Sequence record: LR756500.1
Length of the DNA stretch: 64,000 nt
Direction: 5' to 3' (one strand)
Both the position numbers and the translations under genes were made by a program. The notes beneath the pieces are model-generated. The model saw only the letters and a list, made by a program, of their open reading frames with translations. It was not told where the DNA came from and made no database searches. How positions within the stretch are numbered: the first letter of the stretch is position 1; every line of letters starts with the position of its first letter. Shown here in pieces: positions 2,403 through 46,506 of this stretch.

Positions 2403-2551
2403 TGAGAGAGGATGGATTTGAACCACCAAAGACTTTCGTCCGCTGATTTACTGTCAGTTGAGTTTACCAATACTCAGTTTTTCTGTAATAGCTTTAAGTT
2501 CTATTTTCATAGATATTGTAAAAGTTATAAATTGAATTTATTAACTCTCTC
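2403..2551 (-). tRNA. tRNA-Tyr(GUA)-like gene interrupted by ~65-nt element (about 2478-2542) between acceptor and D stem
   Basis: Acceptor halves GAGAGAG / CTCTCTC are 149 nt apart; loop CAGTAAA (A33), variable arm GAC-GAAA-GTC. Confidence 0.75.
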
Positions 2552-2677
2552 ATTATTTCAAATAACTTCGGCTGAGTGTTATGGATATCTTTCAATCCTT
2601 TGTTCCTCATTTAATCTTCTAAGTTGCCATTTAGAACCGTTGTGGAATCTAAGGGGTTCGAATCCCTTTTTTAAACT

Positions 2678-3507
2678 TTATTTTAATGAATTTAAATTTA
2701 TATATGTTTCTAATTTATTTTTATAATAAGAACCATATTTTAATTCCCATTCATTAATTTTTTCTTTTAATTCTTCAATATTAATACTGCATTTAAATCC
2801 TTTTGATATATTATCATTATGTCTTAATAATTTACAATTTGCTGGATGAGCTAATAACAAAGGATTAATTTTTTGTTTATATCCTTCTGATACTGATAGC
2901 ATATGATCTCTACTTATGCCATTCATATTATTTCCCCTATTTTTAGCTTTATACCATCCGTATTTTTTATTAAAGTAAAATCAAATTCTTCATTATAACT
3001 ATTTAAAGAAAATTTAAATAGTGCATTATTATAATATTTTTTATAATTATCTAAATGTTTTCTTTTATATGCTCTTACACATTCATCAGAACAGTATTTT
3101 CTCATTAAAAAGTGCTCTTTTTCACAATAAGGACATTTTTTAATTCTAGGAGTTTTTAAAAATTTATCGTTCCATTTTTTATAAGAACCTTTTGATGCCA
3201 AACCGCTAACAGCTCTAGCACAAAATATACAACAATAATATTTTTCTTTAAATTCTCTTTTATTATTTGATTTAACTTCAAATTCTGTATTACATCTTAA
3301 ATAATTATTACACTTAACAATTTTTGTAATAATATTTTTATCTAATTCTTTTTTTCTTTTCTTTAATGATTTAGAAATTTTTTCTGATTGGTTTTTATAA
3401 TCTTTATTTTTATTAATCATTATATTTCTACATGCATAAGAACAATATTTATTAGTTAATTTATATTTTTCTTTACCACATACAGGACAATTTTTTTCGA
3501 GTTCCAT
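2678..3507 (-). pseudogene. Zn-finger/HNH-type homing endonuclease-like gene split by a 1-nt frameshift in an A-run near 2965
   Basis: ORFs 2923..3507 and 2678..2926 join into ...LIKKYGWYKAKNRGNNMNGISRDH... if one A is added; CxxC motifs. Could be a sequencing error. Confidence 0.55.
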
Positions 3508-3558
3508 AAATATTTTATTTTATATATTAGTGGAGCTATCAGAATTTGAACTTATTAT

Positions 3559-3639
3559 TGGTGGAGGAAATGGGGTTCGAATCCCATGAAACCTCTTGAT
3601 TGCAAATCAAGTACTCTAGCCAGACTGAGCTATACCCCC
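3559..3639 (-). tRNA. tRNA-Ala(UGC)
   Basis: Anticodon arm CTTGA-TTTGCAA-TCAAG, G3:U70, encoded CCA. Confidence 0.9.
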
Positions 3640-3685
3640 CCTAATAAAAATTTAATTCACAGTATTCCAAAGAACATTTTTAAAA

Positions 3686-3717
3686 CAAAAAAAATCCGAT
3701 TTGATTAGAACCGGATT
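3686..3717 (-). terminator. Intrinsic terminator of attenuator 1
   Basis: AAATCCG...CGGATTT stem followed by a T-run on the minus strand. Confidence 0.75.
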
Positions 3718-3750
3718 TAATATTTTAGTTTATATTTATACAAACATATC

Positions 3751-3819
3751 TCATCCGGTAATAGGTGGTGTTCCTAAAGTTTGTGCTTGACCTAATGGAT
3801 ATGTAGATAATGTTTTCAT
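3751..3819 (-). CDS. Leader peptide 1, MKTLSTYPLGQAQTLGTPPITG (22 aa)
   Basis: Manually translated; lies between promoter 3857-3885 and terminator; codons match the downstream tRNA cluster. Confidence 0.75.
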   Translation of the reverse strand: MKTLSTYPLGQAQTLGTPPITG

Positions 3820-3856
3820 TTTTTTATATATAAAACCTTTTTTGTGTAATTTGATT

Positions 3857-3885
3857 ATTATATGCATTTTTTCTAAAATGTTTCG
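3857..3885 (-). promoter_or_regulatory. CGAAAC-N17-TATAAT promoter (also at 25512-25540, 33125-33153, 38561-38589, 46540-46568, 62277-62305; N18 at 46604-46633, 47689-47718, 57014-57043)
   Basis: Same two hexamers with 17-18 nt spacing found by eye in at least nine intergenic regions. Confidence 0.7.
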
Positions 3886-4498
3886 AATAATTATTATTAT
3901 ATGTAAATATAATTAAAAAGAAATTAAAATAAAAATTTTTATAAAAATTAGTTAATTATATTCGATAATTGTTCTTGTTGTTGGTTTAACTTCATGCCAT
4001 ATTTGTTTTGCATTTACCATATCTTGTTTAATCCATGGAGAATCTCCTAATACGGCTTTAAAATATTTACCGCTAGATATTTCTTTAATAACATATTCAT
4101 GTTGAGTTGAATTTTTTGATTGATCGCTATCTATTATTTTTTCGCTTACTATTGTATAAAGTTTAATTTCATTTTTTGTATCATAAATACCTTCCTCATA
4201 CATTATAGATCGTATTTGTTCTTCCGTAAATGTTCTAGTTTCCATATTTAATTAATTTATGTTATACTTAATAGATTATGTAATTCCATTTGTAATTCTC
4301 GTCTACCCATTTGTTTTAAATAATAACCCATTTTTTCATATATTTCAATATCTGATAGATTTTGACCGTCTATAGCAAATCTTTGATTATTAATACCATC
4401 AAATACTACATAATCTTTATCTAATAAATCTTTAAATGAAGTTTTAGCATTAAAATTTAGACCAAGACTTACTCCTAATTTTATTATTTCGTTTGTTT

Positions 4499-5275
4499 TC
4501 ATTCGTACAATATTATTCCTTTATTTGAATCTAATATGGGATGATTTTCATTATCAAAAGCCCAGAAAGGAGCATGACTTAATAATTTACCATTTTCTTC
4601 TCCTGTAAAATTATGATTACAATTATGTAATAATCGTATTCTTTTTTCACTTGCATTTTTACACTGTTGTAAATATACATGAGAAATATATGTACCAACT
4701 ACTTCATCATTTTCTCCAATAATAATACTTAATTCGCCTTTAAAATCTTTATATGTTTCCATTATTTGTTTCATTTCAATATTACCAGATGGAGCACATA
4801 ATAATATTTTTTTAATTTCTTTATATCTATTAGCCATATAAGCAGCTACTGCTCCACCTGCAGAAGTACCAATTAAATAAATATTTGGATCTTTTTCTCC
4901 ACATATTTCAATAGAATTGTTTATACAATATTCAATAACTTCATGAGTTTTTGAAATTATATGAGAAGGATATAAATTTCTATTTAATGTATTATACATA
5001 GATCTCGGAACACTATTATTCATTCTAACAAATGAACCTAATTCTTTTGATACTATATAATCACCTAGTTTAATATATTTATTTTCATAACCTTCAGCAG
5101 TGCCACCGTAGCCTGGAATATTAATTATTATATTCTTTGAATTACATTCATGAATAAATATTTCAGAATTATTTAATTTTATCTGCATTTTCTTTAGAAT
5201 ATAAATATATTTGTTTATGTTCAAACCAAAATTGAGCCCATTGTTCTTTAGCTTCTTTTTTATTAAGTCCTTCAA
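4499..5275 (-). CDS. Alpha/beta hydrolase (true start probably internal)
   Basis: PGYGG oxyanion motif, GTSAGG nucleophile elbow, downstream D and H (GENDEVV, HNCNHNF). Confidence 0.65.
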   Translation of the reverse strand: MKDLIKKKLKNNGLNFGLNINKYIYILKKMQIKLNNSEIFIHECNSKNIIINIPGYGGTAEGYENKYIKLGDYIVSKELGSFVRMNNSVPRSMYNTLNRNLYPSHIISKTHEVIEYCINNSIEICGEKDPNIYLIGTSAGGAVAAYMANRYKEIKKILLCAPSGNIEMKQIMETYKDFKGELSIIIGENDEVVGTYISHVYLQQCKNASEKRIRLLHNCNHNFTGEENGKLLSHAPFWAFDNENHPILDSNKGIILYE

Positions 5276-5826
5276 TTAAAAATTTTTTAAGTCTTTTTTT
5301 CCATTTGCGAGGTTTTATTTTAAAAGTTTTCATTTAATAATAAAATTGCAGAATTATTATAATAGCCATCTCCTGTAAGTTTATAATTTTTATTATTGTA
5401 AGTAAATATTATCCAATAATCCCATTGATATCCATTACTATCAAAATTAATTAATATCTTGTCTAATGTATTAATGTAAGATATAATATCATTAGGTCTA
5501 ACATATAATAATTCTATTGTTTTTACTTTGCCTGATAAAACAGATTGAATATCTTCTTCCATCCATTTTATTACCTGTTTTTCAACATCTTTTTTATTCA
5601 TTATTTATTATTAAATAGTTCAATATCTTCATATCTAAAAGATTGACCACACAATGTACATCTATCTTGATCTATAATTTTAAATGTATTTACATCTCTT
5701 TGCATAAATAATATTCCCTCTTCACATTCTGGGCAAATAGATTTATAAATAGATTCATTACTATATCTTTTTAAATTCATGTATTTAATAATCTTTATAG
5801 GATTATTGATATTTATTGCAATTAAA

Positions 5827-6915
5827 TTATTCATATTTTAAAGATTTAATAAGTTTAGGATTTAATAAAATATATTGTAATAATTTTATTAAATCATCAA
5901 CATCATTTTTATGAACAGTTTCAACTGTAGTGTGCATATATCTCATCGCTAATTTTAATAAAGCAGTCGGTATTCCATGTGGATAAGCATATGAATCTGC
6001 ATTTGTTCCAGATCCTCTACCACTCGCAGTTAATTGATAAGGTATTTTATTTTCCTTTGCTGTATCAATTATTAATTTTAATAAATTCTTTTGAATTGAT
6101 GGAGCATTCATAATAACTAAACCTTTGCCCGCTGATACTGTACCTTGTTTACTTTTATTATATGCTGGGCTTTCAGTATCATGAGTTACATCTATGACTA
6201 TAGCTATATCAGGTTTAATTTTTTCAACAACCATTTGAGCGCCATGTAATCCTACTTCTTCCTGTACAGCATTAACTATAATTAATTCAAAAGGTAATTG
6301 AATTTTATTTTCATATAATTTTTTAATTAATTGTGAATTAACAAATCCTCCTATTTTATCATCTAGAGATCTACCACAATAATAATCTCCTAAATCCATA
6401 TAGCCATCAGACATTGTAATAGGAGTTCCAATTGTTATTCCTAATTTTTCAACATCTTCTTTTTTAGAAACTCCTATGTCTATAAAAATATTTTCTATTT
6501 TTAATTCGAATTTATCTTCTTGAACATGAATAGCAGGGTGACCAAAAACACCTTTAACTTTTCCATTGTCTCCCCATATATCAACTCTGGCTGATGGTGT
6601 AATTGTGATGTCAGAACCACCTAAACGTCCAACTTTTATAAATCCTTCATTTGTAATATCAAATACAAAAAAACCTATTTCATCACAATGAGCATCTAAT
6701 AAAACAGTTTTTATTTCTGATGTTTCTTTTAATGTTTTTAATGCTAAATTAGAAATATAATAAGCATATGCATTACCATAATTATCTATTTCAACTTTGT
6801 CAGCATATTTTTTAACATAATCTATCCATACTTTTTGACCTCCTAATAATAATTCGTATCCACTAGGAGATGGTGTATTAATATATTTTTTAAGAAATTC
6901 TTTTCTGTTTTTCAT
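5827..6915 (-). CDS. M42 family metallo-aminopeptidase (FrvX/YsdC-like)
   Basis: SPSGYE, AHCDEIG, LDDK, VQEEVGL, DVT, HT metal-binding motifs. Confidence 0.85.
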   Translation of the reverse strand: MKNRKEFLKKYINTPSPSGYELLLGGQKVWIDYVKKYADKVEIDNYGNAYAYYISNLALKTLKETSEIKTVLLDAHCDEIGFFVFDITNEGFIKVGRLGGSDITITPSARVDIWGDNGKVKGVFGHPAIHVQEDKFELKIENIFIDIGVSKKEDVEKLGITIGTPITMSDGYMDLGDYYCGRSLDDKIGGFVNSQLIKKLYENKIQLPFELIIVNAVQEEVGLHGAQMVVEKIKPDIAIVIDVTHDTESPAYNKSKQGTVSAGKGLVIMNAPSIQKNLLKLIIDTAKENKIPYQLTASGRGSGTNADSYAYPHGIPTALLKLAMRYMHTTVETVHKNDVDDLIKLLQYILLNPKLIKSLKYE

Positions 6916-7806
6916 ATTTTAATCGTTTAGCTTCATATTGTAATTTTTTAATACAACTATATTCATGCTTTAATATTTTTATTTCATTAAGCATAACTTT
7001 ATCGCAATATGAACATTTATAGGCTTTAACTATTATCATTTTTATATTAAAGCATTTAAAATTGTTAATTTATTATTAATTGTAAAATTTATCATTAAAA
7101 AGGAATTATTTTTAATTTTATTAATATCAATAATTTTTTCTATATAAGTAAAATTTTCATTTAATAAAACTTTTTCATTATTAAAAATATCAATATAACT
7201 AATATTTATATTTTTAATTCCATATATTTTTACTTTTATTTTTTTATTATATAAATTAATAACTTCTAAATATGTTTCTATGTTTATTAATTCATTTTTA
7301 TTTAAATCAATATTAAAAACATATGTTCTATAAATACCATTTTTATCTAATGTATTTAATATGATCTCAGTATTAGTTGTATCATTAAAAACATGAGTTA
7401 CTTTTGAATCATAATAAATAGATGATTCAAGTATCCAACGACAATATTCAAAATCATGATTTAAATTAATTTCAGTTATAATTAATTCATTTTTGTTAAT
7501 TTGATATTTAATAGATATATTTGCTAATAATGTAAAATTTATAACAAATAATAAGAATAGTAGAAAAATATTTTTCATATTAATTTTTTATAAATATAAT
7601 AAAAAAGTTAATAAAAAAAAAATTAAATCCACTTAATTGCTTTTTGAAGAAAATTTGGTTTTTCTTTTATTTTTCTAGCCAATTTTAATTGTTTGTCCAA
7701 TGGGATATTATTAATTATAGAAAGGATTAATTCTTGTATTTCTATAATTTCTTTTTTAGAATTACCATTAATTTCAATTTCAATTTTTTGAATCATAATT
7801 TAAATA

Positions 7807-8412: not shown

Positions 8413-8542
8413 AAGTTTAATTTATTTTTTTATATATTTTAAATCTTATTGCTTAATTTATTTTAATACATTTCACCGGCCCTTTAACTGTAAATTTTAT
8501 ATTGGGTTTATATAATAAAGTTTCGAATGCTTACTGTTATTT

Positions 8543-10980: not shown

Positions 10981-11018
10981 TTGTTTAAAAAATAAAAGGG
11001 GCTTTAAGCCCCTTATTA

Positions 11019-11714: not shown

Positions 11715-11725
11715 TGTTATAATTA

Positions 11726-12559
11726 TTAAAGGTTAATATCTGTTAATTTAGCAAATCTTATACCCATTTGTCTAGCTTGAGCATAAATTGGATCTGCAAG
11801 TGTTTCAAATCCTGGTACTGGAGACATTCCATCTTCAAGAATAATAAACTTTGAAGCTAATTGAGGGAATTCCATTGCTTGTTTAAGAGTATTTGCTACA
11901 CAATGACTAGAAGCTTCTCCTGCAAAATAAATTTCATTATATTTTTCTAATGTGTTAATTAGATATTGATTAAGTTGAGTAGCAGGAGCATTTTGAACTG
12001 GAATATTTGCTCTAAATGCACCAAAATGTTCACTTAATGGGTGTTCACCTTTTTGAATAACTTGAAAAAATCTTCCTTGTCTTGCCCAATTTTTAACAGC
12101 TGTCATTAATTCATCTACTATAGCAGCTCCTGTTGATCCAACTATACAATGTTCAGGCCAAATACAATGTGGAAATTCTTTTTGTCTTTCTAATTCTTCA
12201 ACATATTTTAAAGATTCATGAGGCATATATCTTGGAGTCCATTCTCCAGAACGTATTTGTGAAGAACTAATACTTGTAAAATGACCTGGATTATTTCCAT
12301 CTTTATCTTGCCAATATGATGGATGAGATATATCAATTACTTGATGTGTATCTTGAGTTAATCCTATATAATTAATTTGTGATTTATTTCTATCAATAAA
12401 ATCAACAATTCTTTTTACATCATTTTCGGCACCTTTAACATAAAGAGCACCTTGTGGAAAAACAATATCATCTTTTGGATCATTTGTTACTTTAATTCTT
12501 CTTTCTGGTAAACAAAAATCATTTTGTATATCAATAAGTAATAATGCAGATTTTTTCAT
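11726..12559 (-). CDS. Nicotinamidase/isochorismatase-family cysteine hydrolase
   Basis: LLIDIQNDF, TQDTH, WPEHC, GEASSHCV. Confidence 0.75.
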   Translation of the reverse strand: MKKSALLLIDIQNDFCLPERRIKVTNDPKDDIVFPQGALYVKGAENDVKRIVDFIDRNKSQINYIGLTQDTHQVIDISHPSYWQDKDGNNPGHFTSISSSQIRSGEWTPRYMPHESLKYVEELERQKEFPHCIWPEHCIVGSTGAAIVDELMTAVKNWARQGRFFQVIQKGEHPLSEHFGAFRANIPVQNAPATQLNQYLINTLEKYNEIYFAGEASSHCVANTLKQAMEFPQLASKFIILEDGMSPVPGFETLADPIYAQARQMGIRFAKLTDINL

Positions 12560-13533: not shown

Positions 13534-13543
13534 ATTTTAAATT

Positions 13544-15853: not shown

Positions 15854-16714
15854 TTACAAATTCCTAAATAATACTGGACGTTCTATAATTATAGGTATAT
15901 GCCGTTTAAATTCAGATTTAATATGTCTATTAATAACTAAATGATCTTTATAAATAGATTTTTCTTTATTTACAATATAATCGTAAAGTATTTTATCAGC
16001 TTCTTGATAACTAGATGCACCTATTTGTTCTAAATCACTGTTACTAATTCCTAGCCCATCAGTTGGAACAGCATTAATACATTCTTGAAGAGCTAATTTA
16101 ACTTTACCTTCTAATTCATTATCAACTATATATTGTGATAATTTATAAACTTCAGTTTTCCAAAGCATTTGTATTTGTGCATAATCTCCTTGGTCGCCAC
16201 AGATCGTCCAAAACCCTAATAAATATTCAGTGTAATTATCAGTTGACATTACCATACCTTTATTCTTAGATGCTAAATTATAAAGATAAATCATTCTTAA
16301 TCTAGCTTTAATATTTCCTAATCTTATTTTTTTACCATTTAATGTATTATCAACAATTGGATCAACAATGTCATCAAAGTATTCTATATCATCATAATCT
16401 TCAGATAAATCTAAATGGTTAAAATCAGTACAGAAATTTTTACCAATATTCATAGATCTATTTATTTCATCTACTTTATTAGTTTTAATTGTTAAACTTC
16501 GTCCTATAATAGGAATATTTAATTCATCACATATAGGTTTAGATATTGCTGCAATTAATGCACTATCAATTCCACCTGAAATTCCTAATACAATTGATTT
16601 TAAATTATTGTTTAATAAATATTGTTTTAATTCATTTCTTAAATTTGTAATTACTAAATTGCATTCCTCTTTAGTATTAAGTAATGATACTGGATCGTTA
16701 GAAATATATTTCAT
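15854..16714 (-). CDS. nadE: NH3-dependent NAD+ synthetase
   Basis: LGISGGIDS, GNIKARLRM, TDNYTE, GFWTICGD, PTDGL. Confidence 0.9.
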   Translation of the reverse strand: MKYISNDPVSLLNTKEECNLVITNLRNELKQYLLNNNLKSIVLGISGGIDSALIAAISKPICDELNIPIIGRSLTIKTNKVDEINRSMNIGKNFCTDFNHLDLSEDYDDIEYFDDIVDPIVDNTLNGKKIRLGNIKARLRMIYLYNLASKNKGMVMSTDNYTEYLLGFWTICGDQGDYAQIQMLWKTEVYKLSQYIVDNELEGKVKLALQECINAVPTDGLGISNSDLEQIGASSYQEADKILYDYIVNKEKSIYKDHLVINRHIKSEFKRHIPIIIERPVLFRNL

Positions 16715-19896: not shown

Positions 19897-20457
19897 TTAC
19901 ATTAATTGGGTAATATATTTAGATGGAACATTATCAGTTAAATAAACATCATTTAAAGTTTTATAAAAAACAATATTATCTTTAACCATTGATTTACAAT
20001 CAATTAATAAAATTACTCCACCATTTTTTTTATCATGTCTAGCTCCGGTTTCTAAAGCCTTTTGTATGTGTTCTTCTCCATATAAATGAACATGATGTCT
20101 TGTCATTTTATTAAGACCTTCTTTTTTAATTTGTGATAATAAACGAAATCCTGTTCCATGATACAATTTTGTAGGAGGTATAACCTTTTCAAAATCATTT
20201 TTAATATTAATAGAATGACCTTGATTAGCTTTAATCATAGTTTTATTTTCATTAAAACGAAATCTTTGTTTAGGACATGTTTCTACTATATTAATAATAT
20301 CATCTACGGTAAAATCTTCTCGCTCACTTGCCTTAGATATAATTTCATCAACGTTAGCCCATCCATATTCATCTAATTTAAGATCAATAGTTTCAGGTCT
20401 ATGCCTTAAAACATAAGTTAAAAATTTACTTATTTTATTTTTTTTGTTTGAATCCAT
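19897..20457 (-). CDS. kptA: RNA 2'-phosphotransferase Tpt1/KptA
   Basis: LRHRP, LDEYGWA, KQRF, ANQGHS, LYHGT, RHHVHL, VYLTD. Confidence 0.9.
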   Translation of the reverse strand: MDSNKKNKISKFLTYVLRHRPETIDLKLDEYGWANVDEIISKASEREDFTVDDIINIVETCPKQRFRFNENKTMIKANQGHSINIKNDFEKVIPPTKLYHGTGFRLLSQIKKEGLNKMTRHHVHLYGEEHIQKALETGARHDKKNGGVILLIDCKSMVKDNIVFYKTLNDVYLTDNVPSKYITQLM

Positions 20458-23203: not shown

Positions 23204-23214
23204 TAAAAAATTTG

Positions 23215-23291
23215 CGGACTTAATCAGATTCGAACTGACCTGTTTTTCCTGAGTGACAGTCAGGTGGCCACACCAAGCAACCCCTAAGTCC
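23215..23291 (-). tRNA. tRNA-Asp(GUC)
   Basis: Anticodon arm CCTGA-CTGTCAC-TCAGG, G73. Confidence 0.9.
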
Positions 23292-23292: not shown

Positions 23293-24186
23293 TTATGCTA
23301 TAAATACCTTTTCATTATTTTTAAATACTAATTTTCTTCCTTTAATCCAACCTTTATTTATCCATTCATAAACTTCTTCTTTTTTTACTCTTATAGATTT
23401 CTTCTCTTCTAAATTATGTATCCAACACTTTCCATACTGACTATTTCTTGAACCTAATTGAGATATTTTATTTGCTTTACTTATTTTTTCTCGATGCTCT
23501 TTAGCTAATTTACGTCCTATTTGAATTCCAACTAATTCACCTGATAAATATCTTGGATCATCTACATTTACCCAAAATTTATTTCCGTCTTTATCTTTTA
23601 CACTTGTTTTATGTTTCATTATTCCAACTAATTCACTACTTAAAACTCTAGAATCATTTAAACGACATCTAATAATANNNNNNNNNNNNNNNNNNNNNAA
23701 AGAAAAATATTTACTTTGATATTGATATTCACCTGATTTTAATTTTATATTATTTACATCACATTTAAAAGAATTTCCTTCTTTATCTATAACATTGACT
23801 TTTCCTATACTTATAGGGAAATATTCATTATTATATCTTGAATCACTTTTTAACATTAATGTTTTATTATTTTTTTTATCTTTAACTAATACCAATCCTT
23901 TAGTATTCCAACCATAACCACCTAACATAATATTATAAACATCTTTTCTTTTAACAAACTCTTCATTTACTAACTCAGCCTCTTTAGCAAACATCTCTTC
24001 AAATGTATCAAAATTATAAAGAACTATACGTTCAAAATTGTCTATTCCATACTTCTTAAATGCCTTATGCAAATAAGTACCTGATCCCATATAACCATCT
24101 TCCAACTTATCCGTCTGATGACAGCCTATATAAATTTTATTGTTAATTTTATTAATAATTTCATAAACTATATTATACTTACTCAT
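23293..24186 (-). CDS. GIY-YIG (Seg-like) homing endonuclease; contains a 21-N gap at 23678-23698
   Basis: NIVYEIINKINNKIYIGCH, YMGSG, YNIMLGG, repeated VKDK motifs. Confidence 0.8.
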   Translation of the reverse strand: MSKYNIVYEIINKINNKIYIGCHQTDKLEDGYMGSGTYLHKAFKKYGIDNFERIVLYNFDTFEEMFAKEAELVNEEFVKRKDVYNIMLGGYGWNTKGLVLVKDKKNNKTLMLKSDSRYNNEYFPISIGKVNVIDKEGNSFKCDVNNIKLKSGEYQYQSKYFSXXXXXXXXIIRCRLNDSRVLSSELVGIMKHKTSVKDKDGNKFWVNVDDPRYLSGELVGIQIGRKLAKEHREKISKANKISQLGSRNSQYGKCWIHNLEEKKSIRVKKEEVYEWINKGWIKGRKLVFKNNEKVFIA

Positions 24187-24243
24187 ACCAATGATATATT
24201 TTATTTTATATATCATTAATAGTTCGAGTAAATTATTCGAGGA

Positions 24244-24381
24244 TGGCCGAGAGGGGATTCGAACCCCTGATGTTATCGTGACAAGATAAGACTTTATCCA
24301 TTTATTCTGTAATAACTTTGAGTCCTATTGAGTAGGTAATTTATAAGTTATCTGTGAACTTATTACTAAGCTACTCGGCCA
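24244..24381 (-). tRNA. tRNA-Asp(GUC)-like gene interrupted by ~66-nt element (about 24301-24366) in the D loop
   Basis: GGCCGAG-TA-GCTT-AG|insert|TGGATA-AAGT-C-TTATC-TTGTCAC-GATAA; A73. Confidence 0.8.
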
Positions 24382-24450: not shown

Positions 24451-25149
24451 TTAAATATTATATTCCTTTTTAAATTCTATTTTTTGTTTTCTATTTTGAA
24501 AATCTTTTAATATATTTAAATTTATTAAATCTTCATCTATTAAAATTTTTAATTTACAGGGAAAATTATTCCATTTTGCTAAATCTTTTAATGTAACGTA
24601 TCCTTTAATTTCAATATAAATTTTTTCATCTAATAAAAAGAAATCAGGTCTATATCTTCGAGTTTTTCCTTCATATTCATATTCAAATGTAATATAAGGC
24701 CTTTCCCATTTAATATTATTTTCATCTAAATATTTAGCATAAAGATATTCCCATTTTACTTGTAATTTTATTCCATTATATTCATAATAATTTTTTTTAG
24801 AAAAAGATGTATGCCATTCTCCATTTTTTATTCTTTCATTTATTTTATCAGATATTTTTTGTTTATGTTCTTTTGTTAATTCTGTATTTTTAGAATGATG
24901 TTTAAATAATCCTTCTTTTAAATGTTTCGTTAATGTTTCACCACATCTTTTAACTCTTTCATCAGTATCTTTAGTTAAACCTTTATTCCAAATTATTCTA
25001 CCTTTTTTATATCCGGCATTAGGATCATGATTTCTACCTTCTCCATGCATTTTCCAAATATGTGATCCTATTCCATAAATTGAATATTCTTTATTACATA
25101 TTAAACATTTACATTTTCCGTTATCTAATTTTACATATTGTTTATCCAT
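24451..25149 (-). CDS. Homing endonuclease (zinc finger, WNKGLT repeat, PD-(D/E)xK C-terminus)
   Basis: CxxC-H, WNKGLTK, YRPDF...YIEIKG. Confidence 0.65.
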   Translation of the reverse strand: MDKQYVKLDNGKCKCLICNKEYSIYGIGSHIWKMHGEGRNHDPNAGYKKGRIIWNKGLTKDTDERVKRCGETLTKHLKEGLFKHHSKNTELTKEHKQKISDKINERIKNGEWHTSFSKKNYYEYNGIKLQVKWEYLYAKYLDENNIKWERPYITFEYEYEGKTRRYRPDFFLLDEKIYIEIKGYVTLKDLAKWNNFPCKLKILIDEDLINLNILKDFQNRKQKIEFKKEYNI

Positions 25150-31195: not shown

Positions 31196-31792
31196 TTATC
31201 TTTTTCTTTTTCTACCTACTCTAGGCAAAGTATCTAATTTATCAATTAGTTCTAGATTAAGTTTTTTAATATCTTCTGTCAAAGAACCACTTACTGTTTT
31301 ATAATAATCAGATTTAATCCATTCTTCGTAAGGAGTATTTCCTCTTATTCTATTACATTTTCTGCAGCATGATACTAAGTTATCTGGATGCGATTCTCCT
31401 TCACTCTCCCATGTTATAATATGATCAACTGTTAAAGGAACATTATCAACTCCACAATATCTACATTTATAATTATCTCTTCTATAAACTTGCCAAGATA
31501 CTATGCTTTCAATATTTCTTTGAGATTTTCTCAAAATAACATTTTGTCCTTTTCTAATTCCAGATACTTCAACATTATCTAATTGAAATAATATTTTATG
31601 CCACGTATTTATATCCGGTCTTATTACTTTAATATCATTTGAAGTTATTTCTTCATCTGGTAATTTTACAATAAAACATTCACCTTCAGGAGAACTTAAA
31701 GCTATTCCACTTATAGTATTATAAATACCTAATTTTTTAATTTCGTTTTCATTCATCATTTTAAAAATTAAATTATCTTCCTCACTCTTCAA
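31196..31792 (-). CDS. HNH endonuclease domain protein
   Basis: VYRRDNYKCRYCG, LTVDHII, NLVSCCRKCN. Confidence 0.75.
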   Translation of the reverse strand: MKSEEDNLIFKMMNENEIKKLGIYNTISGIALSSPEGECFIVKLPDEEITSNDIKVIRPDINTWHKILFQLDNVEVSGIRKGQNVILRKSQRNIESIVSWQVYRRDNYKCRYCGVDNVPLTVDHIITWESEGESHPDNLVSCCRKCNRIRGNTPYEEWIKSDYYKTVSGSLTEDIKKLNLELIDKLDTLPRVGRKRKR

Positions 31793-36304: not shown

Positions 36305-36730
36305 TTAGTTTATTACCCACTTTTCTTTAAATTGTTTTTCAGTATAATCAAAATATTTTTCTATATTATTTTTATTAATAGCTTTAACAACTTTTCCATA
36401 TACAGCAGTTGTCCAACCATTTATATGTCCTTTATTGTTAGCAATTAAATATCCTTTTGTTTCATTTACTTGTATACATAGATGAGAATCTATATATTTT
36501 CCACGTATCTTACAAAAAAGAATATCTCCTTTTTTATAACTCTTTTGTTTAATAAAAAATGTAAGTGAAGGATTATCTAATTTAGGTAACATGCTATTAC
36601 CATAACATTTCATACTGCCATATCCAAACTTATATAAATTATATCTTAATCTTTCATACTTGTTTGTTTTAATTAATTGTTCGTCAAATTCTTCTTTTAT
36701 TTTTTCTTCTTCTTTTGTTTCTTCGTTCAT
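36305..36730 (-). CDS. S24/S26 peptidase-like protein
   Basis: CYGNSMLP serine motif, KKGDILF. Confidence 0.45.
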   Translation of the reverse strand: MNEETKEEEKIKEEFDEQLIKTNKYERLRYNLYKFGYGSMKCYGNSMLPKLDNPSLTFFIKQKSYKKGDILFCKIRGKYIDSHLCIQVNETKGYLIANNKGHINGWTTAVYGKVVKAINKNNIEKYFDYTEKQFKEKWVIN

Positions 36731-37305
36731 GTTGTTATTTCTTCATAATTTTTTATATTTGCTTTTAAAAGAGTATCTGGAAATATTGTTTTTCCTAAAT
36801 AAAAATCTTCATAAGCAATTCTCATTTTATTAGCACATTCGAAAGGATATACTCCTCCTGTTCCTGTTCCTAATCCAGGACATACTATAGTTCTTAATTG
36901 TGGATTTTGTTTAGCTAAAATAAATATAGCTTTTGCTGCTAAAAATATATTAGGAGTGTTAGATAATAAACTAGGGACTCTCATTGTAGGTGCAGAAATT
37001 AGAGTAGGAAATAAAGGATATTTTGTACTTATAGTTGTTGCTTGACCTACTAATAATTCTCCATTAAATTCATTTTTTATTTTATTTTGAAGTTCATATT
37101 GAATATGCCATCCCATTTTTAAAGAATATAATAAATCTATTCCTCCATCCATAAATCCAAATGAATTAGCTGGACTAACTATAGCATCTCCTGTAAAATT
37201 AAATATATCACCTTTATATACTTCAAAATTAGAATATAATTTAAATTCTTTTTCCCATGCTTTAACTAGAACATCTTTAGTATCTACTAAAATAAATTTT
37301 GTCAT
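36727..37305 (-). CDS. Macrodomain (ADP-ribose binding/hydrolase)
   Basis: GDIF, AIVSPANSFGFMDGGID, APTMRVP, PGLGTGTG. Confidence 0.88.
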   Translation of the reverse strand: MTKFILVDTKDVLVKAWEKEFKLYSNFEVYKGDIFNFTGDAIVSPANSFGFMDGGIDLLYSLKMGWHIQYELQNKIKNEFNGELLVGQATTISTKYPLFPTLISAPTMRVPSLLSNTPNIFLAAKAIFILAKQNPQLRTIVCPGLGTGTGGVYPFECANKMRIAYEDFYLGKTIFPDTLLKANIKNYEEITT

Positions 37306-37664: not shown

Positions 37665-37934
37665 ATGATCAAATGTTTTAAAAATAAATATTATAAGTAG
37701 GCCCTAACCCTACATAATCGTCCTGACTTCCACAGTATAGAACATCTCGAAGTAAATCTTTCATTAGTAATCATATTTATCGTATGTGCCCCTATTACTA
37801 AATGATTAACGTTGAATGTTAATTACAGTTGCTTAATCCATCATAATATCCAGTTATAAATTTGGCAAAATTTTATACTGTTTGAGATTTTTTTATTATA
37901 TTGCCATAATGAAAATCAATAAAAACATTAACAG

Positions 37935-38017
37935 AGGAAGGAGTGGGATTCGAACCCACGGTACCGTAGTACGTCAGTTTTCAGGACTGAATTCATAAAC
38001 CTCTCGAACACCCTTCC
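37935..38017 (-). tRNA. tRNA-Ser(UGA)
   Basis: TCAGT-CCTGAAA-ACTGA, long variable arm GTAC-TACG-GTAC. Confidence 0.88.
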
Positions 38018-38286: not shown

Positions 38287-38291
38287 AATTT

Positions 38292-41874: not shown

Positions 41875-41882
41875 AATTTTTC

Positions 41883-43448: not shown

Positions 43449-44362
43449 AATATAAAATTTATTTGTTTAATTGATTTATTTGTAAATATAATAATTTTGT
43501 AATTAAATAGGTATTTAATTATCATTTAATTTATAAATAGTTATTATAACCATTTATAAATTCTATTACTCATTTGTTCTAAAATGTGTTTTCTATCTTT
43601 ATCTAAAATTTCAATTTCATTTAATATTTCAGTTAAACTATTTTGAAGAATAATTTTAACATTAGCTTGTTCAAATTTATGTTGTGTTTTACTAAAAATA
43701 TTAAACTCACCTGTTAATAAATCTTTAACAACTATTTGATATTCATTTACTGCTATAATTTCAAAATAGTTTAATCCATTTGTAGTTATTTTATTTTCAA
43801 TTTCAAACATAAATTTATTTAGATATTATATCGAATTCATCTCCAAGTTTATTAATTGTATTTGCTAATATTTTAACTAATGATTTTATCCATTCATTAG
43901 ATTGTCGTTCTAAAATTTCATCTTGTTCTTTATCGGTTAAATCTTCAAAAACAACATTTTCCCATTTACTTGTTTCTATATTTTTACTTCTAAAAAAGCA
44001 ACCTGATAATTTTCTTTGTGTTTTAGGCATTTTTATTTTTTGAAATTTTTATTATAACTTTTTCATTTAAATCATTTACATGTTCTAAACTTTTTATATT
44101 TAATTTTTTTAAATCTTCAATGTTTTTTATTCCTATTAATTCATTATAAGCATTAATTTGATCTTCTGATAATGAATTAACAAAATCGATTGATTTTGTT
44201 ATATGTAATGAAAAATTATAATCTTCTTCTGTTAATATATTTTCACCACATAATGGACATGTTTTATTAATCCAATTAATATAGTCTTCATGTTTAATTG
44301 TTTCATCTTTCCAATCACAATTAGGATTATCACATTGTAATCCTTCATTTATTACTTCTATA

Positions 44363-44845
44363 TTATTTTTCATTTTTTCTTTTCCATTTTTTAAAAGGAT
44401 TTCTAGCTAATTCCGCATTATAGTATTTTTTAGTATAACTAACTTCTTTTTCAATCCAAATAGGTTTTTCAAATTCTTCATTTTCAGATGTTAATTCAAT
44501 TTCAGCCATAATTAATCCCTCATTATCATCTTCGAAAAAATCAATTTCCCATTTCTTATCTTTATACATTAAAACAGATCTTGTTTTTTTAATTTTATTT
44601 TTACAAAATTTTTCGTATAGTTCAGAACCTTGTTTAAAAGGAATTTCATATTCAATTTCTTCTCGAGATATTCCTTTTACTTTACTTTTAATTGTCATTA
44701 ATCCAAGACTGCTATCTATTAATCTAACTCTAATAGAACACTCTGAATTTTTAGATAAATAACCTTGTTTTATTTTATATGATATATCAAAAGATACATT
44801 ATTAATAAGATCTTTGTTAACTAAAAATTTTCTTTCTATTTCCAT
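44363..44845 (-). CDS. CYTH domain protein
   Basis: MEIERKFLV, QGYL, RVR, TIK, EIEYEI, KTR, WEID, AEIEL. Confidence 0.88.
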   Translation of the reverse strand: MEIERKFLVNKDLINNVSFDISYKIKQGYLSKNSECSIRVRLIDSSLGLMTIKSKVKGISREEIEYEIPFKQGSELYEKFCKNKIKKTRSVLMYKDKKWEIDFFEDDNEGLIMAEIELTSENEEFEKPIWIEKEVSYTKKYYNAELARNPFKKWKRKNEK

Positions 44846-44919
44846 ACGTGTGTTTAAACAATTAAACCGAACTCACATAGAATTTGGTTTAATAATGGAG
44901 ATAATTCAACAATTATTTT

Positions 44920-44995
44920 TGGTTGAATGTATCGGATTTGAACCGAAGACCCTCTGCTTTTAAGGCGGATGCTCTACCAACTGAGCTAATATTCT
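44920..44995 (-). tRNA. tRNA-like gene with UAA anticodon in a class I (Lys-like) body, flanked by the permuted element
   Basis: TCCGC-CTTAAAA-GCAGA, 5-nt variable loop, two acceptor mismatches, encoded CCA. Confidence 0.65.
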
Positions 44996-45078
44996 GTAAT
45001 AATTATTAGTTCTCCATTATTTTTTATTAATTAAAATATTTATATGCAATATTAATAATAATGTTTAAATAATAAAAA

Positions 45079-45885
45079 TTACCAATATTTATAAATATCT
45101 CCATCAATTCCATCAACATGTATTTTTAGATTATATGCTTCTTCTAAAGACATTATTATTTTTTGCATATCTGCATCATAAAATCCTGCACAAGCAATAC
45201 TTCCACATTCTACAATTTTCCACCTATATTCACTAAGACATATATCTATAGTAAATGCTTTAGCCAATTGAAATATTTTAATCATTTGTTTAACATATTC
45301 AATTGCATCATTATCAACTATATCATCATAAGCAATATATGTTCCTCTTCTATAAGTACTTTGTGTAACTATTTTTCCATCTATTATCCAAAATCTTATT
45401 TCTTGAGTAATATTTTTAACAGTTGCTACTTGTAATAAAGTTTCATTTGTTATAGTCGTTTTAGGTAGTAAATTATTTTTAAAATTTGTCCATTCTTCAT
45501 ATGTAAATACTCTTCCAGTAAATACTTTACTATCTAATGTTGGTCTAATAAAATGTTTATCAGAAATCCATTCAAAATCATTTCCAAATTTAACTATTCT
45601 AGAATCATAATTAAGTAAATTTTCTTTATAATGTTTAGAATAAACATCATAATCATGATTTTTAGTTATTAGAGTGCCTGGAAACCAATTATATTGTTTT
45701 GATAATCTAGCTAGTTTTAAAGATCCAAATATAAAAACATCTTCACGATCAGTATTAAAATCTAATGTTTCTTTATCATTACTAACATTTATTAATTCAT
45801 AAGATATATTAAATCTATCTAATGTTTTAATAAGTTTATCATAACCTTCTTCTCTAAATAAATTTTTTTGTATAATATAATACAT
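45079..45885 (-). CDS. ATP-grasp domain protein (DUF4343-like)
   Basis: FIRP...KVFTG, EIRFWIIDG, FTIDI, KIVEC, AGFY. Confidence 0.65.
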   Translation of the reverse strand: MYYIIQKNLFREEGYDKLIKTLDRFNISYELINVSNDKETLDFNTDREDVFIFGSLKLARLSKQYNWFPGTLITKNHDYDVYSKHYKENLLNYDSRIVKFGNDFEWISDKHFIRPTLDSKVFTGRVFTYEEWTNFKNNLLPKTTITNETLLQVATVKNITQEIRFWIIDGKIVTQSTYRRGTYIAYDDIVDNDAIEYVKQMIKIFQLAKAFTIDICLSEYRWKIVECGSIACAGFYDADMQKIIMSLEEAYNLKIHVDGIDGDIYKYW

Positions 45886-45973
45886 TTATAGTTAAATATT
45901 ATTTTTTGAATTTTATATATCTAAATAATATAAAAAAACCTATATAAATAAATTATATAGGTTTTTTTGGGGC

Positions 45974-46114
45974 TGGAGGGAGTAGGAATTGAACCTACAA
46001 TATCAAAACCCTAAATTTTGCGTGTTTACCGTTTTTCTGTAATGACTTTGAGTTCACCTTTAAAAGATGGTATTGTAAAAGACATAATTGAATTTTTATT
46101 TTCACCATCCCTCC
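45974..46114 (-). tRNA. tRNA(UAG), Leu-like with short variable loop, interrupted by ~69-nt element (about 46032-46100) in the D loop
   Basis: GGAGGGA-TG-GTG-AA|insert|CGGTAAA-CAC-G-CAAAA-TTTAGGG-TTTTG. Confidence 0.8.
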
Positions 46115-46369
46115 ATGTAATGTTTGTAAAAATTGAGTTAATTAATAAGATAAGTTTTTGTATATTTTTTATAACGCTTACAAGCTTTAAGTAATTTAAA
46201 TAGTTACTACTATGTTGTTTTGAACCTTATCAAAACTTCTAACAAACAATGTTTATTAGACTCGCTTTTTATTTGATAAATTATTATCAATTTTTCTGAA
46301 CTATCTTAGAGTTCTCAATTTTAATCATAATGTTAAAGAACGTATTTTACTTTTTAAAGTAAATGTATT

Positions 46370-46506
46370 TGGCGGGGGAATTCGGGATCGAACCGAAACT
46401 GAATGTTTTCAACACATTTGCTCTACCAATTAAGCTTTTATACTGTAATAACTTAGAGTTTCTTTTCAGACTAATTTTAAAGTTATAGATGTAAATCTAT
46501 TCCCCC
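46370..46506 (-). tRNA. tRNA(UGA) in a class I body, interrupted by ~62-nt element (about 46436-46497) after position 9
   Basis: GGGGGAA-TA|insert|GCTT-AATTGGTA-GAGC-A-AATGT-GTTGAAA-ACATT; G73 plus CCA. Confidence 0.78.

What the first reader, a model, noticed from the sequence alone, without database searches (positions are those of the whole stretch)
2403..46506. Conserved ~65-nt structured element inserted in four different tRNA genes at non-anticodon positions
Seen: inserts at about 2478-2542 (Tyr), 24301-24366 (Asp), 46032-46100 (UAG) and 46436-46497 (UGA) share AATA(A/G)A-n-TTCA-n3-4-ATAACTT-[A-rich]-hairpin-ACT(C/T)-n-AAGTTAT-TACAGAA-AAA. Pairing is supported by covariation: TTC/GAA becomes TAC/GTA in the UGA copy, and ATAACTT/AAGTTAT becomes ATGTCTTT/AAAGTCAT in the UAG copy. 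The apical stem varies freely and has a GAAA loop in two copies. Two copies sit at positions 8-10 and two in the D loop just before N-G18-G19. Established: bacterial tRNA introns are large group I/II introns in or near the anticodon loop; small introns at varied positions are archaeal BHB type. This fits neither as far as I can see. Inference: a new mini-intron, processing signal, protein-binding domain or tiny mobile element.
Basis: partly seen in the sequence, partly recalled or inferred. Interest (0 to 1): 0.92.

Follow-up and report, generated by a model that had tools for sequence, protein, structure and literature searches.

The report
Hairpin inserts splitting phage tRNA genes
Four otherwise intact tRNA genes of a 430-460 kb groundwater phage are each split near the D arm by a copy of the same ~65-base hairpin-forming insert. 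The insert matches no known intron, ribozyme or RNA family, and it looks like a small mobile tRNA intervening sequence of a kind not described for bacteria or their viruses.

Summary
Four copies (61-69 nt, 61-77% identical) of one element interrupt tRNA-Tyr(GUA), tRNA-Asp(GUC) and two class-I tRNAs with anticodons UAG and UGA. These two anticodons read Leu and Ser codons; they are not stop suppressors. Two copies sit between nt 9 and 10, and two sit in the D loop just 5' of G18G19. Removing each insert restores a normal cloverleaf. A fifth, decayed copy lies between genes.

All copies fold into the same P1-P2-P3 hairpin with conserved internal loops. The fold is thermodynamically weak and covariation is thin (two compensatory pairs).

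No Rfam family, BHB motif, group I/II intron or known ribozyme fits. No copy was found in IMG/VR, JGI metagenomes, 185,000 prokaryote genomes or 28 related phage records. Relatives do carry other short inserts in tRNA genes, including one at the same D-loop site.

The phage encodes Pnkp, an Rnl2-type ligase and Tpt1 within or near the tRNA array. It has no splicing endonuclease, RtcB, reverse transcriptase or RNase III.

Best reading (about 0.4): a lineage-specific mobile mini-intron cut out and resealed by proteins. Rivals are a retained or unligated extra arm, a MITE-like element in redundant pseudogenes, and a new ribozyme. No RNA data exist to decide between them.

The parts
2477..2542 (-). 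Insert copy 1 (66 nt) in tRNA-Tyr(GUA), between nt 9 and 10. Layout 5'->3': linker 2542-2537, P1 2536-2534/2483-2481, P2 2528-2522/2494-2488, P3 hairpin with GAAA loop 2513-2500, 3' linker 2480-2477.
   Evidence: 73.1 bits; MFE reproduces P1-P2-P3
2403..2551 (-). Interrupted tRNA-Tyr(GUA) gene, class II. Exon 1 is 2543-2551 and exon 2 is 2403-2476. It has A33 and an A27.C43 mismatch.
24301..24364 (-). Insert copy 2 (64 nt) in the D loop of tRNA-Asp(GUC), between AGU and UGGAUA.
   Evidence: 69.4 bits; -8.1 kcal/mol, z -1.8
24244..24380 (-). Interrupted tRNA-Asp(GUC) gene. All stems are intact after excision. The discriminator is A73.
46031..46099 (-). Insert copy 3 (66-69 nt; the 5' border is ambiguous within an A run) in the D loop of a class-I tRNA with anticodon UAG, directly before GGUAAA.
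   Evidence: 77.4 bits; MFE of the whole precursor keeps the cloverleaf plus the insert hairpin
45974..46114 (-). Interrupted class-I tRNA with anticodon UAG (reads CUA/CUN Leu codons; G37).
   Evidence: (Rfam tRNA partial hit)
46437..46497 (-). Insert copy 4 (61-62 nt) between nt 9 and 10 of a class-I tRNA with anticodon UGA. P1 is UAC/GUA instead of UUC/GAA. The apical loop is GAAA.
   Evidence: (70.9 bits)
46370..46506 (-). Interrupted class-I tRNA with anticodon UGA (reads UCA Ser codons; A36A37A38; G73; CCA encoded).
   Evidence: (Rfam tRNA 38.7 bits, model positions 6-65)
46290..46353 (-). Degenerate fifth copy. It is intergenic, 17 nt downstream of the CCA end of tRNA(UGA). P2 is broken and no tRNA lies around it.
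   Evidence: 27.4 bits, E about 0.01; no tRNA there
19897..20457 (-). Context, inferred partner only: Tpt1/KptA RNA 2'-phosphotransferase inside the tRNA array.
   Evidence: (PF01885, 162 bits)
52322..53278 (-). Context, inferred partner only: T4-Pnkp-like polynucleotide kinase/3'-phosphatase.
   Evidence: PF08645; phrog_505
24451..25149 (-). Context: probable free-standing homing endonuclease (Zn finger, NUMOD3-like repeats, PD-(D/E)XK-like motif), 70 nt upstream of the interrupted tRNA-Asp.
   Evidence: (PHROG endonuclease families, E 5e-10); the motif reading is by eye

Best explanation
The element is a lineage-specific family of small (61-69 nt) structured intervening sequences. It has spread, in the sense orientation, into the 5' quarter (nt 9/10 or the D loop before G18) of at least four different tRNA genes of this huge phage.

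**Proposed working:**
1. The tRNA is transcribed with the insert.
2. The insert folds on its own into a P1-P2-P3 hairpin. Its base (P1), flanked by A-rich single-stranded linkers, brings the two exon ends together while the rest of the tRNA forms its cloverleaf.
3. A protein endonuclease, not identified, probably reads the conserved internal loops (UACA; WUAMAWUA/ACUYW) and cuts in or at the linkers.
4. The ends are healed and sealed by the phage's own RNA-repair set (Pnkp-like kinase/phosphatase, Rnl2-type ligase, and Tpt1 if a 2'-phosphate is left).

**Shown:** the copies, their positions, the common fold, the intact exons and the repair genes.

**Inferred:** transcription, excision, the enzymes involved and the mobility mechanism.
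For: - **tRNA association.** Four of five copies lie in tRNA genes, which make up under 1% of the genome. All are on the tRNA sense strand.
- **Spread rather than gene duplication.** Inserts are more alike (61-77%) than their host tRNAs (49-63%). They sit at two different sites, and these do not follow the two insert sub-families.
- **Clean excision.** Removing the whole unit restores canonical connectors and D loops such as AGUUGGAUA. Three of four genes then pass ARAGORN at default settings.
- **Leader context.** All four keep the AT|G1 leader seen in 16 of 25 normal tRNAs.
- **Common fold.** All four sense strands independently give the same P1-P2-P3 minimum-energy fold. The whole UAG precursor folds as cloverleaf plus hairpin.
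- **Pairing.** There are two compensatory changes, and P3 differs in sequence between copies yet always pairs.
- **Decay outside tRNA.** The only copy outside a tRNA is the decayed one.
- **Repair genes.** The phage carries Tpt1, a Pnkp-like gene and an Rnl2-type ligase.
- **Relatives.** Related phages have other 50-68-nt inserts built as an A-rich linker plus hairpin. One lies in a tRNA-His D loop at the same site.
Against: - **No expression data.** There is no RNA evidence at all, and no RNA runs hold this phage.
- **No endonuclease.** No candidate was identified. No EndA, RtcB, 2H CPDase, RNase III or reverse transcriptase was found in the 429-kb record.
- **Repair genes have another explanation.** Tpt1, Pnkp and the ligase are already explained in the literature as repair of tRNAs cut by host nucleases (PMC9503650, PMC7824862).
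- **Weak structure.** The hairpin is weak (-3.2 to -8.1 kcal/mol, z not significant) and covariation is statistically weak.
- **Redundancy.** Each interrupted tRNA has an uninterrupted gene with the same anticodon in the window, so they could be dispensable.
- **Imperfect hosts.** The Tyr copy has A33, and the Asp copy has A73 instead of the usual G73.
- **No conservation.** The element was found in no other genome searched.
Confidence: 0.4

Rival explanations
1. **Retained or unligated extra arm.** The hairpin stays in the mature RNA as an additional arm projecting from the D-loop/connector region. Alternatively it is cut out without re-ligation, as with the intervening sequences of bacterial 23S rRNA, leaving a two-piece tRNA held together by the acceptor stem. 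In this reading the RNA is a specialised tRNA or tRNA-like molecule, for example a decoy or protein-docking scaffold.
For: - The D-loop alpha region (nt 16-17) naturally tolerates extra nucleotides (established tRNA knowledge).
- The A-rich linkers would act as flexible tethers.
- The whole precursor can fold as cloverleaf plus hairpin.
- The conserved loops look like a protein-binding surface.
- No splicing endonuclease was found.
- Relatives have conserved insert families at fixed sites in tRNA-like genes. L124 and L201-203 share one; L126, L182 and L190 share another.
- The hosts are odd tRNAs: class-I bodies with Leu or Ser anticodons, and A33 in Tyr.
Against: - A 60-nt arm at the elbow, or between nt 9 and 10, should clash with RNase P, the ribosome and the core tertiary pairs (inference from known tRNA structure).
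- The same element at two different sites in four unrelated tRNAs fits a passenger better than a purpose-built domain.
- The element is not conserved outside this genome.
Confidence: 0.2
2. **MITE-like DNA element.** The element is a non-autonomous DNA element, or a passenger of homing endonucleases, whose imperfect terminal inverted repeats only look like an RNA hairpin. It landed in redundant tRNA gene copies, which are now pseudogenes or on the way to becoming so.
For: - P1+P2 read equally well as 14-15-bp imperfect inverted repeats.
- Copies occur in one genome only.
- There is one extragenic decayed copy.
- Every host tRNA has an intact isoacceptor.
- The Tyr copy fails default ARAGORN.
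- Homing endonuclease genes lie in the array: 24451-25149 beside the Asp copy, and an HNH gene at 31196-31792.
- A tRNA-Tyr 3' fragment at about 2640-2670 shows that recombination occurs here.
Against: - No target-site duplication or common target sequence is seen.
- No Y1 transposase or reverse transcriptase was found.
- All copies are in the sense orientation.
- The inserts have diverged by 23-39%, yet all stems of three host tRNAs are perfect.
- Conservation is asymmetric and strongest in the unpaired loops.
- G.U pairs (Asp P1 extension, UAG P3) would be C.A mismatches on the other strand.
Confidence: 0.2
3. **New small ribozyme.** The element is a new self-cleaving or self-splicing RNA. 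The conserved internal loops would form the active site, and the cuts would be resealed by the ribozyme itself or by the phage ligase.
For: - It has a two-internal-loop, three-helix layout with invariant unpaired nucleotides and a size typical of small ribozymes.
- The phage has healing and sealing enzymes and Tpt1, which suit 2',3'-cyclic-phosphate ends.
Against: - There is no match to any Rfam ribozyme, even at E up to 10.
- Excision needs two cuts, both outside P1, and one 65-nt hairpin offers no obvious second active site.
- The 7-bp P2 leaves no hinge for the two loops to dock.
- The fold is very AU-rich and weak.
Confidence: 0.08

Closest known systems
Archaeal non-canonical (BHB) tRNA introns, including related introns at different positions in different tRNA genes of one genome
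   Same: Short (tens of nt) inserts at many non-anticodon positions including the D arm. Related insert sequences occur in unrelated tRNA genes of one genome, which implies transposition. Removal restores a normal tRNA.
   Different: No bulge-helix-bulge motif at homologous positions. No EndA in this phage or in 28 relatives. The genome is a tailed-phage type that encodes a tmRNA, which points to a bacterial host.
Bacterial and phage group I (and rare group II) introns in tRNA genes
   Same: Intervening sequences in bacterial-type tRNA genes. They are often mobile and often accompanied by homing endonucleases.
   Different: Those introns are 200 nt or longer, lie in the anticodon loop, and have recognisable ribozyme cores. 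This element is 61-69 nt, lies at nt 9/10 or the D loop, and gives no Rfam intron hit.
Intervening sequences (IVS) of bacterial 23S/16S rRNA, excised by RNase III without re-ligation
   Same: Lineage-specific hairpin inserts in a stable-RNA gene at tolerated surface sites. They are sporadic among relatives and removed by host processing.
   Different: IVS are longer, well-paired RNase III substrates in rRNA. This hairpin has at most 7 contiguous base pairs and sits in tRNA. No phage RNase III was found.
MITEs / REP-like palindromic elements
   Same: Small, multi-copy within one genome, with inverted-repeat ends and no coding capacity.
   Different: The element associates only with tRNA genes, always in the sense orientation. 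It has conserved asymmetric loops, no target-site duplication and no cognate transposase.
Phage tRNA-repair modules (T4 Pnkp/Rnl, jumbo-phage KptA systems; PMC9503650, PMC7824862) and yeast/plant tRNA splicing (healing, sealing, Tpt1)
   Same: The window carries Tpt1, a Pnkp-like gene, Macro and NADAR domains, and an Rnl2-type ligase lies elsewhere in the genome. These are the steps that follow the endonuclease in fungal and plant tRNA splicing.
   Different: In phages these genes are read as repair of nuclease-damaged tRNAs. No link to introns has been shown, here or elsewhere.

Membership tests
Archaeal/eukaryal BHB tRNA intron | Bulge-helix-bulge (3-nt bulge, 4-bp helix, 3-nt bulge) placing both splice sites | tested here: not met
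   An enumeration of BHB-like motifs in the four precursors gave only scattered AU-rich chance helices. None lies at homologous positions, and none excises the insert to leave a valid tRNA. Both junctions lie on the same (outer) side of P1.
Archaeal/eukaryal BHB tRNA intron | Splicing endonuclease (EndA/Sen, PF01974) available | tested here: not met
   No PF01974 match in the phage or in 28 related phage records. The host is unknown, so a host enzyme cannot be excluded.
Group I intron | Conserved P3-P8 ribozyme core of about 200 nt or more, usually in the anticodon loop | tested here: not met
   No Rfam intron family at gathering or at E up to 10. Length is 61-69 nt. Position is nt 9/10 or the D loop.
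Group II intron | Six-domain structure, GUGYG...AY ends, often an RT ORF | tested here: not met
   No Rfam hit. The ends are A-rich. No RVT_1 in the genome.
Known small self-cleaving ribozymes (hammerhead, hairpin, twister, pistol, hatchet, HDV-like) | Match to the family covariance model or core motifs | tested here: not met
   cmscan of 45960-46530 at E up to 10 lists only tRNA and chance hits. The whole window at gathering lists only tRNA and tmRNA. Catalysis itself is not testable with these tools.
IS200/IS605-type PATE or REP element | Cognate Y1 transposase (TnpA/RAYT) and a fixed target tetranucleotide at the left end | tested here: not met
   No PF01797 match in the genome. The flanks of the four copies share no fixed target.
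MITE (DNA transposon derivative) | Terminal inverted repeats plus target-site duplication; random orientation | tested here: inconclusive
   Imperfect inverted repeats exist (P1+P2). No target-site duplication is seen. All 5 copies have the same orientation, but the number is small.
Structured RNA element (generic) | Base pairs kept by compensatory change, beyond chance | tested here: inconclusive
   Over P1+P2, 90% of cells are paired and 2 pairs change on both sides; 34 of 500 shuffles do as well. Slid controls give 30-48% paired. The same minimum-energy architecture appears in all 4 copies, but z-scores are only -0.1 to -1.8.
Functional tRNA gene (the hosts) | Cloverleaf with intact stems and conserved G18G19/T loop after removal of the insert | tested here: met
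   Met for three of the four hosts. ARAGORN at default settings calls Asp, UAG and UGA after excision. Tyr is called only at a relaxed threshold. Expression and charging are not testable here.
rRNA-type IVS (RNase III-excised) | Long near-perfect duplex serving as an RNase III substrate | tested here: not met
   The longest helix is 7 bp, broken by 4x4 and 8x5 internal loops. No phage RNase III.

The most novel reading that the evidence does not exclude
Huge phages of this clade carry a previously unrecognised class of small tRNA introns at non-anticodon positions. Each is an A-rich linker plus hairpin, without a BHB motif or a ribozyme core. They would be removed by a new endonuclease and rejoined by the phage's Pnkp/Rnl2/Tpt1 set. 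This would give phage and bacterial Tpt1 (KptA) a natural splicing substrate, and it would show protein-dependent tRNA splicing in the bacterial virus world.
Probability: 0.3. Interest if true: 0.9.

Novelty: new variant of a known kind. Interest (0 to 1): 0.72.

Why it matters
- **A gap in the textbook picture.** As far as I know, tRNA introns in bacteria and their phages are all self-splicing group I introns (rarely group II) in the anticodon loop. Small protein-spliced introns at varied positions are regarded as an archaeal and eukaryotic trait. A small, structured, apparently mobile insert in the D-arm region of phage tRNA genes would break that division if it is spliced. It would also point to an unknown endonuclease.
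- **A substrate for KptA/Tpt1.** It could give bacterial and phage KptA/Tpt1 a natural substrate. As far as I know, none is established for the bacterial enzyme.
- **If the insert is retained.** It would then be the first tRNA with an extra arm at the elbow.
- **A practical consequence.** ARAGORN did not call these four genes, and Rfam gave only partial hits for two of them. tRNA counts for huge phages may therefore be underestimates. In 41 related tRNA-cluster loci, 23 candidate interrupted genes were found beside 405 called tRNAs. Several of those candidates are duplicates from near-identical contigs or false positives.

Tried and rejected
- **Rfam.** The whole window at gathering and the 45960-46530 region at E up to 10 gave nothing for the insert.
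- **Pattern scans.** Exact or degenerate pattern scans covered IMG/VR, JGI metagenome contigs and 185,579 prokaryote genomes. They returned only this phage's own contig and chance hits inside ORFs.
- **Covariance model R1.** I ran it on relatives' loci and on 28 whole related records. The only hit was a chance match at the start of a GIY-YIG ORF.
- **Sequencing runs.** Only groundwater DNA runs hold this phage, and no RNA runs do. Laying contigs showed the same phage with identical sequence and no insert-free variant. A second public assembly (NCBI LR756500.1, 462 kb) is 100% identical over 20.8 kb, so no strain comparison was possible.
- **BHB motif.** Rejected.
- **Sigma-70 promoter inside the element.** By eye, the -35-like TTCA.. 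and -10-like TACAAT are only about 10 nt apart. Rejected.
- **MazF-type ACA sites, CRISPR-repeat-like 3' end, tetraloop receptor.** Resemblances seen by eye only and not consistent across copies. Dropped.
- **Hairpin-ribozyme resemblance (UAUUAC).** The loops do not correspond. Dropped.
- **Correlation with Tpt1.** Tpt1 is above cut-off in 5 of 28 relatives. The sample is too small and fragmentary to compare with the presence of interrupted tRNAs.
- **Literature.** Nine searches found no description of such inserts in phage tRNA genes. The huge-phage paper (PMC7162821) does not mention introns.
- **MAFFT register.** MAFFT could not put the Tyr P1 in register, and the model alignment also leaves it shifted. 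P1 pairing is therefore understated.

Full report
**Where the window lies.** The window is positions 324729-388728 of a 429,198-bp IMG/VR virus record (24% G+C, CheckV 96%). The source is a groundwater metagenome. The same sequence is in NCBI as LR756500.1 (462,018 bp), which is 100% identical over the 20.8 kb compared. All ORFs in the window are on the - strand. ARAGORN finds 25 tRNAs and a tmRNA in the window, and Rfam adds one more tRNA. All 26 ARAGORN tRNAs of the genome lie within about 58 kb.

**The assembly gap.** The N run at 23678-23698 lies inside ORF 23293-24216, which continues through it in frame (21 N). It is 603 nt from the nearest insert and has no bearing on the finding. I did not read or print that stretch.

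Read on the - strand, the four places show a tRNA 5' part, a 61-69-nt insert, and the rest of the tRNA.
- The 19-nt core ACTYWAAGYYATTACAGWA occurs four times against 0.08 expected. It occurs nowhere else in the genome apart from one 2-mismatch hit on the other strand.
- A covariance model built on the four copies scores them at 69-77 bits. The only other hit of note is a fifth copy at 46290-46353(-), with 27 bits and E about 0.01.

**Anatomy of the element.** In the 5' to 3' direction:
1. An A-rich linker (AAUARA).
2. P1, 3 bp: UUC/GAA, or UAC/GUA in the UGA copy.
3. A 4-5 x 4 internal loop whose 3' strand is always UACA.
4. P2, 7 bp: AUAACUU/AAGUUAU.
5. An 8 x 5 internal loop: WUAMAWUA opposite ACUYW.
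6. A variable apical hairpin P3 of 3-6 bp, with loops GAAA (twice), CUCAA and UUUAA.
7. A 3' linker: AAAC or UAAA.

RNAfold gives this same architecture for each copy on its own. For the UAG gene, the minimum-energy fold of the whole precursor is a cloverleaf with the hairpin emerging from the D loop.

**How strong the structure is.**
- Folding energies are -3.2 to -8.1 kcal/mol, with z-scores of -0.1 to -1.8 against shuffles.
- Over P1+P2 there are two compensatory pairs: U-A to A-U in P1 of the UGA copy, and A-U to G-C in P2 of the UAG copy. The central P2 pair is A.C in the Tyr copy and U.U in the UAG copy. 34 of 500 column shuffles reach the same count. The model alignment leaves the Tyr P1 one column out of register, so P1 pairing is understated.
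- The unpaired loop nucleotides are better conserved than the helices. This suggests recognition by a protein or a tertiary contact rather than a simple stable hairpin.
- G.U pairs in the Asp P1 extension and in the UAG P3 fit RNA on the tRNA strand. On the other strand they would be C.A.

**The host genes.** Excising the whole unit gives tRNA-Asp(GUC), a 76-nt class-I tRNA with anticodon UAG and a 76-nt class-I tRNA with anticodon UGA. ARAGORN calls all three at default settings. The class-II tRNA-Tyr(GUA) is called only at a relaxed threshold because of A33 and an A27.C43 mismatch.
- UAG and UGA here are anticodons. They read CUA/CUN (Leu) and UCA (Ser) codons, with the expected G37 and A36A37A38 contexts. 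They are not stop suppressors.
- Precise removal restores ordinary connectors (U8-N9) and ordinary D loops (AGUUGGAUA in Asp).
- All four genes have AT immediately before G1, as do 16 of the 25 uninterrupted tRNAs. They therefore sit in the same leader context.
- Each has an uninterrupted gene with the same anticodon elsewhere in the window: Tyr 673-753, Asp 23214-23291, Leu(tag) 55160-55242, Ser(tga) 37934-38017. These are only 52-67% identical to the interrupted genes.

**Signs of spread.**
- Inserts are 61-77% identical to one another, while the host tRNAs are 49-63% identical.
- Two sub-families are visible. Tyr and UAG share ACAAUA and a 3' AAAC. Asp and UGA share AAAUUA and a 3' UAAA. 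Each sub-family has one copy at nt 9/10 and one in the D loop, so position does not follow descent.
- Four of five copies lie in tRNA genes, which make up less than 1% of the genome. All five are in the sense orientation.
- The fifth copy is 17 nt past the CCA end of tRNA(UGA). It has a broken P2, and no tRNA can be recognised around it.
- The contrast between this decayed extragenic copy and four well-kept copies inside intact tRNAs is my main argument for selection on the element when it sits inside a tRNA.

**What the element is not.**
- No Rfam family matches.
- No bulge-helix-bulge motif lies at homologous positions, and both junctions lie outside P1 on the same side.
- The phage record has no splicing endonuclease, RtcB, T4 Rnl1, 2H phosphoesterase, Y1 transposase, reverse transcriptase or RNase III. 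About 33 kb of the 462-kb genome is missing from that record, so these absences are not final.
- None of 28 related records has an EndA.

**Distribution.** Pattern scans of IMG/VR, JGI metagenome contigs and one genome for each of 185,579 prokaryote species found the element only in this phage's own contig. Every other match was a chance hit inside an ORF. The model found nothing in 41 tRNA-cluster loci (695 kb) or in 28 whole related records. The closest relatives share only about 60-69% protein identity in the neighbouring R2K ATP-grasp gene. The element therefore belongs to a lineage with a single sequenced member.

**Relatives have their own inserts.** A simple detector looked for a perfect T arm, a perfect 7-bp acceptor pairing 105-200 nt apart, and a deletion that makes ARAGORN call a full tRNA. 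It recovers the four genes here and three in the first relatives. It also finds 23 candidates beside 405 called tRNAs in 41 further loci. Some of these are duplicates from near-identical contigs and a few are false positives.
- A tRNA-His(GUG) in L173/L210 has a 59-68-nt insert in the D loop directly before GGUAAA. This is the same site as the UAG copy here. It is built as a poly-A linker plus hairpin.
- L124 7328-7455 has AAAAA plus a 7-bp-closed hairpin after GGG of the D loop.
- L124 14026-14150 is a full-length Rfam tRNA hit spanning 125 nt. It shares an insert family with L201-203.
- L126, L182, L190 and L191 share a 135-nt tRNA-like gene with an insert after the D arm.

Short non-canonical inserts in tRNA genes thus look recurrent in this clade of huge phages. 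I found no paper that describes them.

**Gene context.** RNA-repair and NAD/ADP-ribose genes are interleaved with the tRNAs:

| Gene | Window coordinates |
|---|---|
| Tpt1/KptA (162 bits) | 19897-20457 |
| T4-Pnkp-like kinase/phosphatase | 52322-53278 |
| NADAR | 51745-52221 |
| Macro | 36727-37305 |
| CYTH | 44363-44845 |
| R2K ATP-grasp | 45079-45885 |
| NAD synthase | 15854-16714 |
| HNH endonuclease | 31196-31792 |

An Rnl2-type RNA ligase lies at genome positions 288419-288925. The literature reads such sets as repair of tRNAs cut by host nucleases (PMC9503650, PMC7824862). They are also exactly the steps that follow the endonuclease in fungal and plant tRNA splicing. That link is my inference, not a result.

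ORF 24451-25149 lies 70 nt upstream of the interrupted Asp gene. It matches PHROG endonuclease families (E 5e-10). By eye it shows a C2H2 finger, NUMOD3-like repeats and a PD-(D/E)XK-like motif. This suggests a free-standing homing endonuclease and possibly collaborative homing with the insert.

**Verdict.**
- Best explanation (about 0.4): a lineage-specific, mobile, structured mini-intron of tRNA genes, removed by an unidentified protein endonuclease and resealed by the phage's repair enzymes.
- Rival, about 0.2: a retained extra arm, or IVS-like excision without ligation.
- Rival, about 0.2: a MITE-like DNA element in redundant, decaying tRNA copies.
- Rival, about 0.08: a new small ribozyme.

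No RNA data exist for this phage, and the one reads call showed only identical DNA. The choice among these readings therefore rests on inference. The finding deserves follow-up. It is real, it matches nothing known, and it belongs to a wider, undescribed pattern in huge-phage tRNA arrays.

Noticed in passing
window 45974-46114 and 46370-46506 (-); also L124 9418-9492, 12430-12504; L147 414-488: These are class-I (short variable loop) tRNAs carrying Leu (UAG, AAG) or Ser (UGA, CGA) anticodons. Bacterial tRNA-Leu and tRNA-Ser are normally class II. It is unclear which synthetase charges these tRNAs.
   Followed up: partly
window 19897-20457, 52322-53278, 51745-52221, 36727-37305, 44363-44845, 45079-45885, 15854-16714, 11726-12559: The tRNA array is interleaved with an RNA-repair and NAD/ADP-ribose gene set: Tpt1/KptA, a Pnkp-like gene, NADAR, Macro, CYTH, an R2K ATP-grasp, NAD synthase and an isochorismatase-like gene.
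   Followed up: partly
window 24451-25149 (-) and 31196-31792 (-): Two probable free-standing homing endonucleases lie inside the tRNA array. One has a Zn finger, NUMOD3-like repeats and a PD-(D/E)XK-like motif. The other is an HNH enzyme. The first lies directly upstream of the interrupted tRNA-Asp.
   Followed up: partly
window about 2640-2670 (-): An isolated tRNA 3' fragment (T arm plus acceptor 3' strand) resembles the end of tRNA-Tyr 673-753. It lies about 90 nt upstream of the interrupted tRNA-Tyr and is a likely recombination remnant.
   Followed up: no
window about 2024-2106 (-) and about 56368-56443 (-): Two further tRNA-like genes with perfect 7-bp acceptor stems and T arms were not called by ARAGORN. 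One has a 9-nt anticodon loop. The other has an Ile-like GAU anticodon arm followed by a D-arm-like segment in an unusual order.
   Followed up: no
window 48652-48720 (-): A 69-nt tRNA with anticodon CUA (ARAGORN labels it 'Pyl') would read UAG stop codons. ORFs in this window look normal under code 11, so I did not test recoding.
   Followed up: no
window 46203-46236 (-): There is a weak Rfam hit to a CRISPR repeat family (CRISPR-DR22, 21.5 bits, E 0.058 for the 571-nt region) in the spacer between the two interrupted tRNAs. It is probably chance, but solitary repeat-like RNAs are known in phages.
   Followed up: no
L173 12948-13090 / L210 12789-12931; L124 7328-7455 and 14026-14150; L201-L203 9430-9558; L126 6195-6330; L182 3435-3569; L190/L191 7649-7783; L184/L185/L188 5069-5266; L197 1854-2039; L198 4707-4893: Related huge phages carry tRNA or tRNA-like genes with other 30-126-nt inserts in the D loop, after the D arm, or in the anticodon/variable region. 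Some insert families are shared between different phages.
   Followed up: partly
L126 about 6260-6366: A 25-nt motif of the form GTGGTGAKRA..GAGWTACTTCGT occurs twice. One copy lies inside an interrupted tRNA-like gene. The other lies directly upstream of a D arm that has no recognisable 5' acceptor strand.
   Followed up: no
L186 10291-10679: Three tandem tRNA-Leu(CAA)-like genes of 110-116 nt have a 7-bp anticodon stem and a variable arm of about 45 nt.
   Followed up: no
window 23678-23698: The window shows 21 N here, while the genome copy laid in the Python box contains no N at all. The stretch therefore appears to be masked rather than unread. I did not read it.
   Followed up: no
window, -2/-1 of tRNA genes: 16 of 25 tRNAs, and all four interrupted ones, are preceded by AT (often AAAT) directly before G1. 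This may be a conserved leader or RNase P context in this phage.
   Followed up: partly
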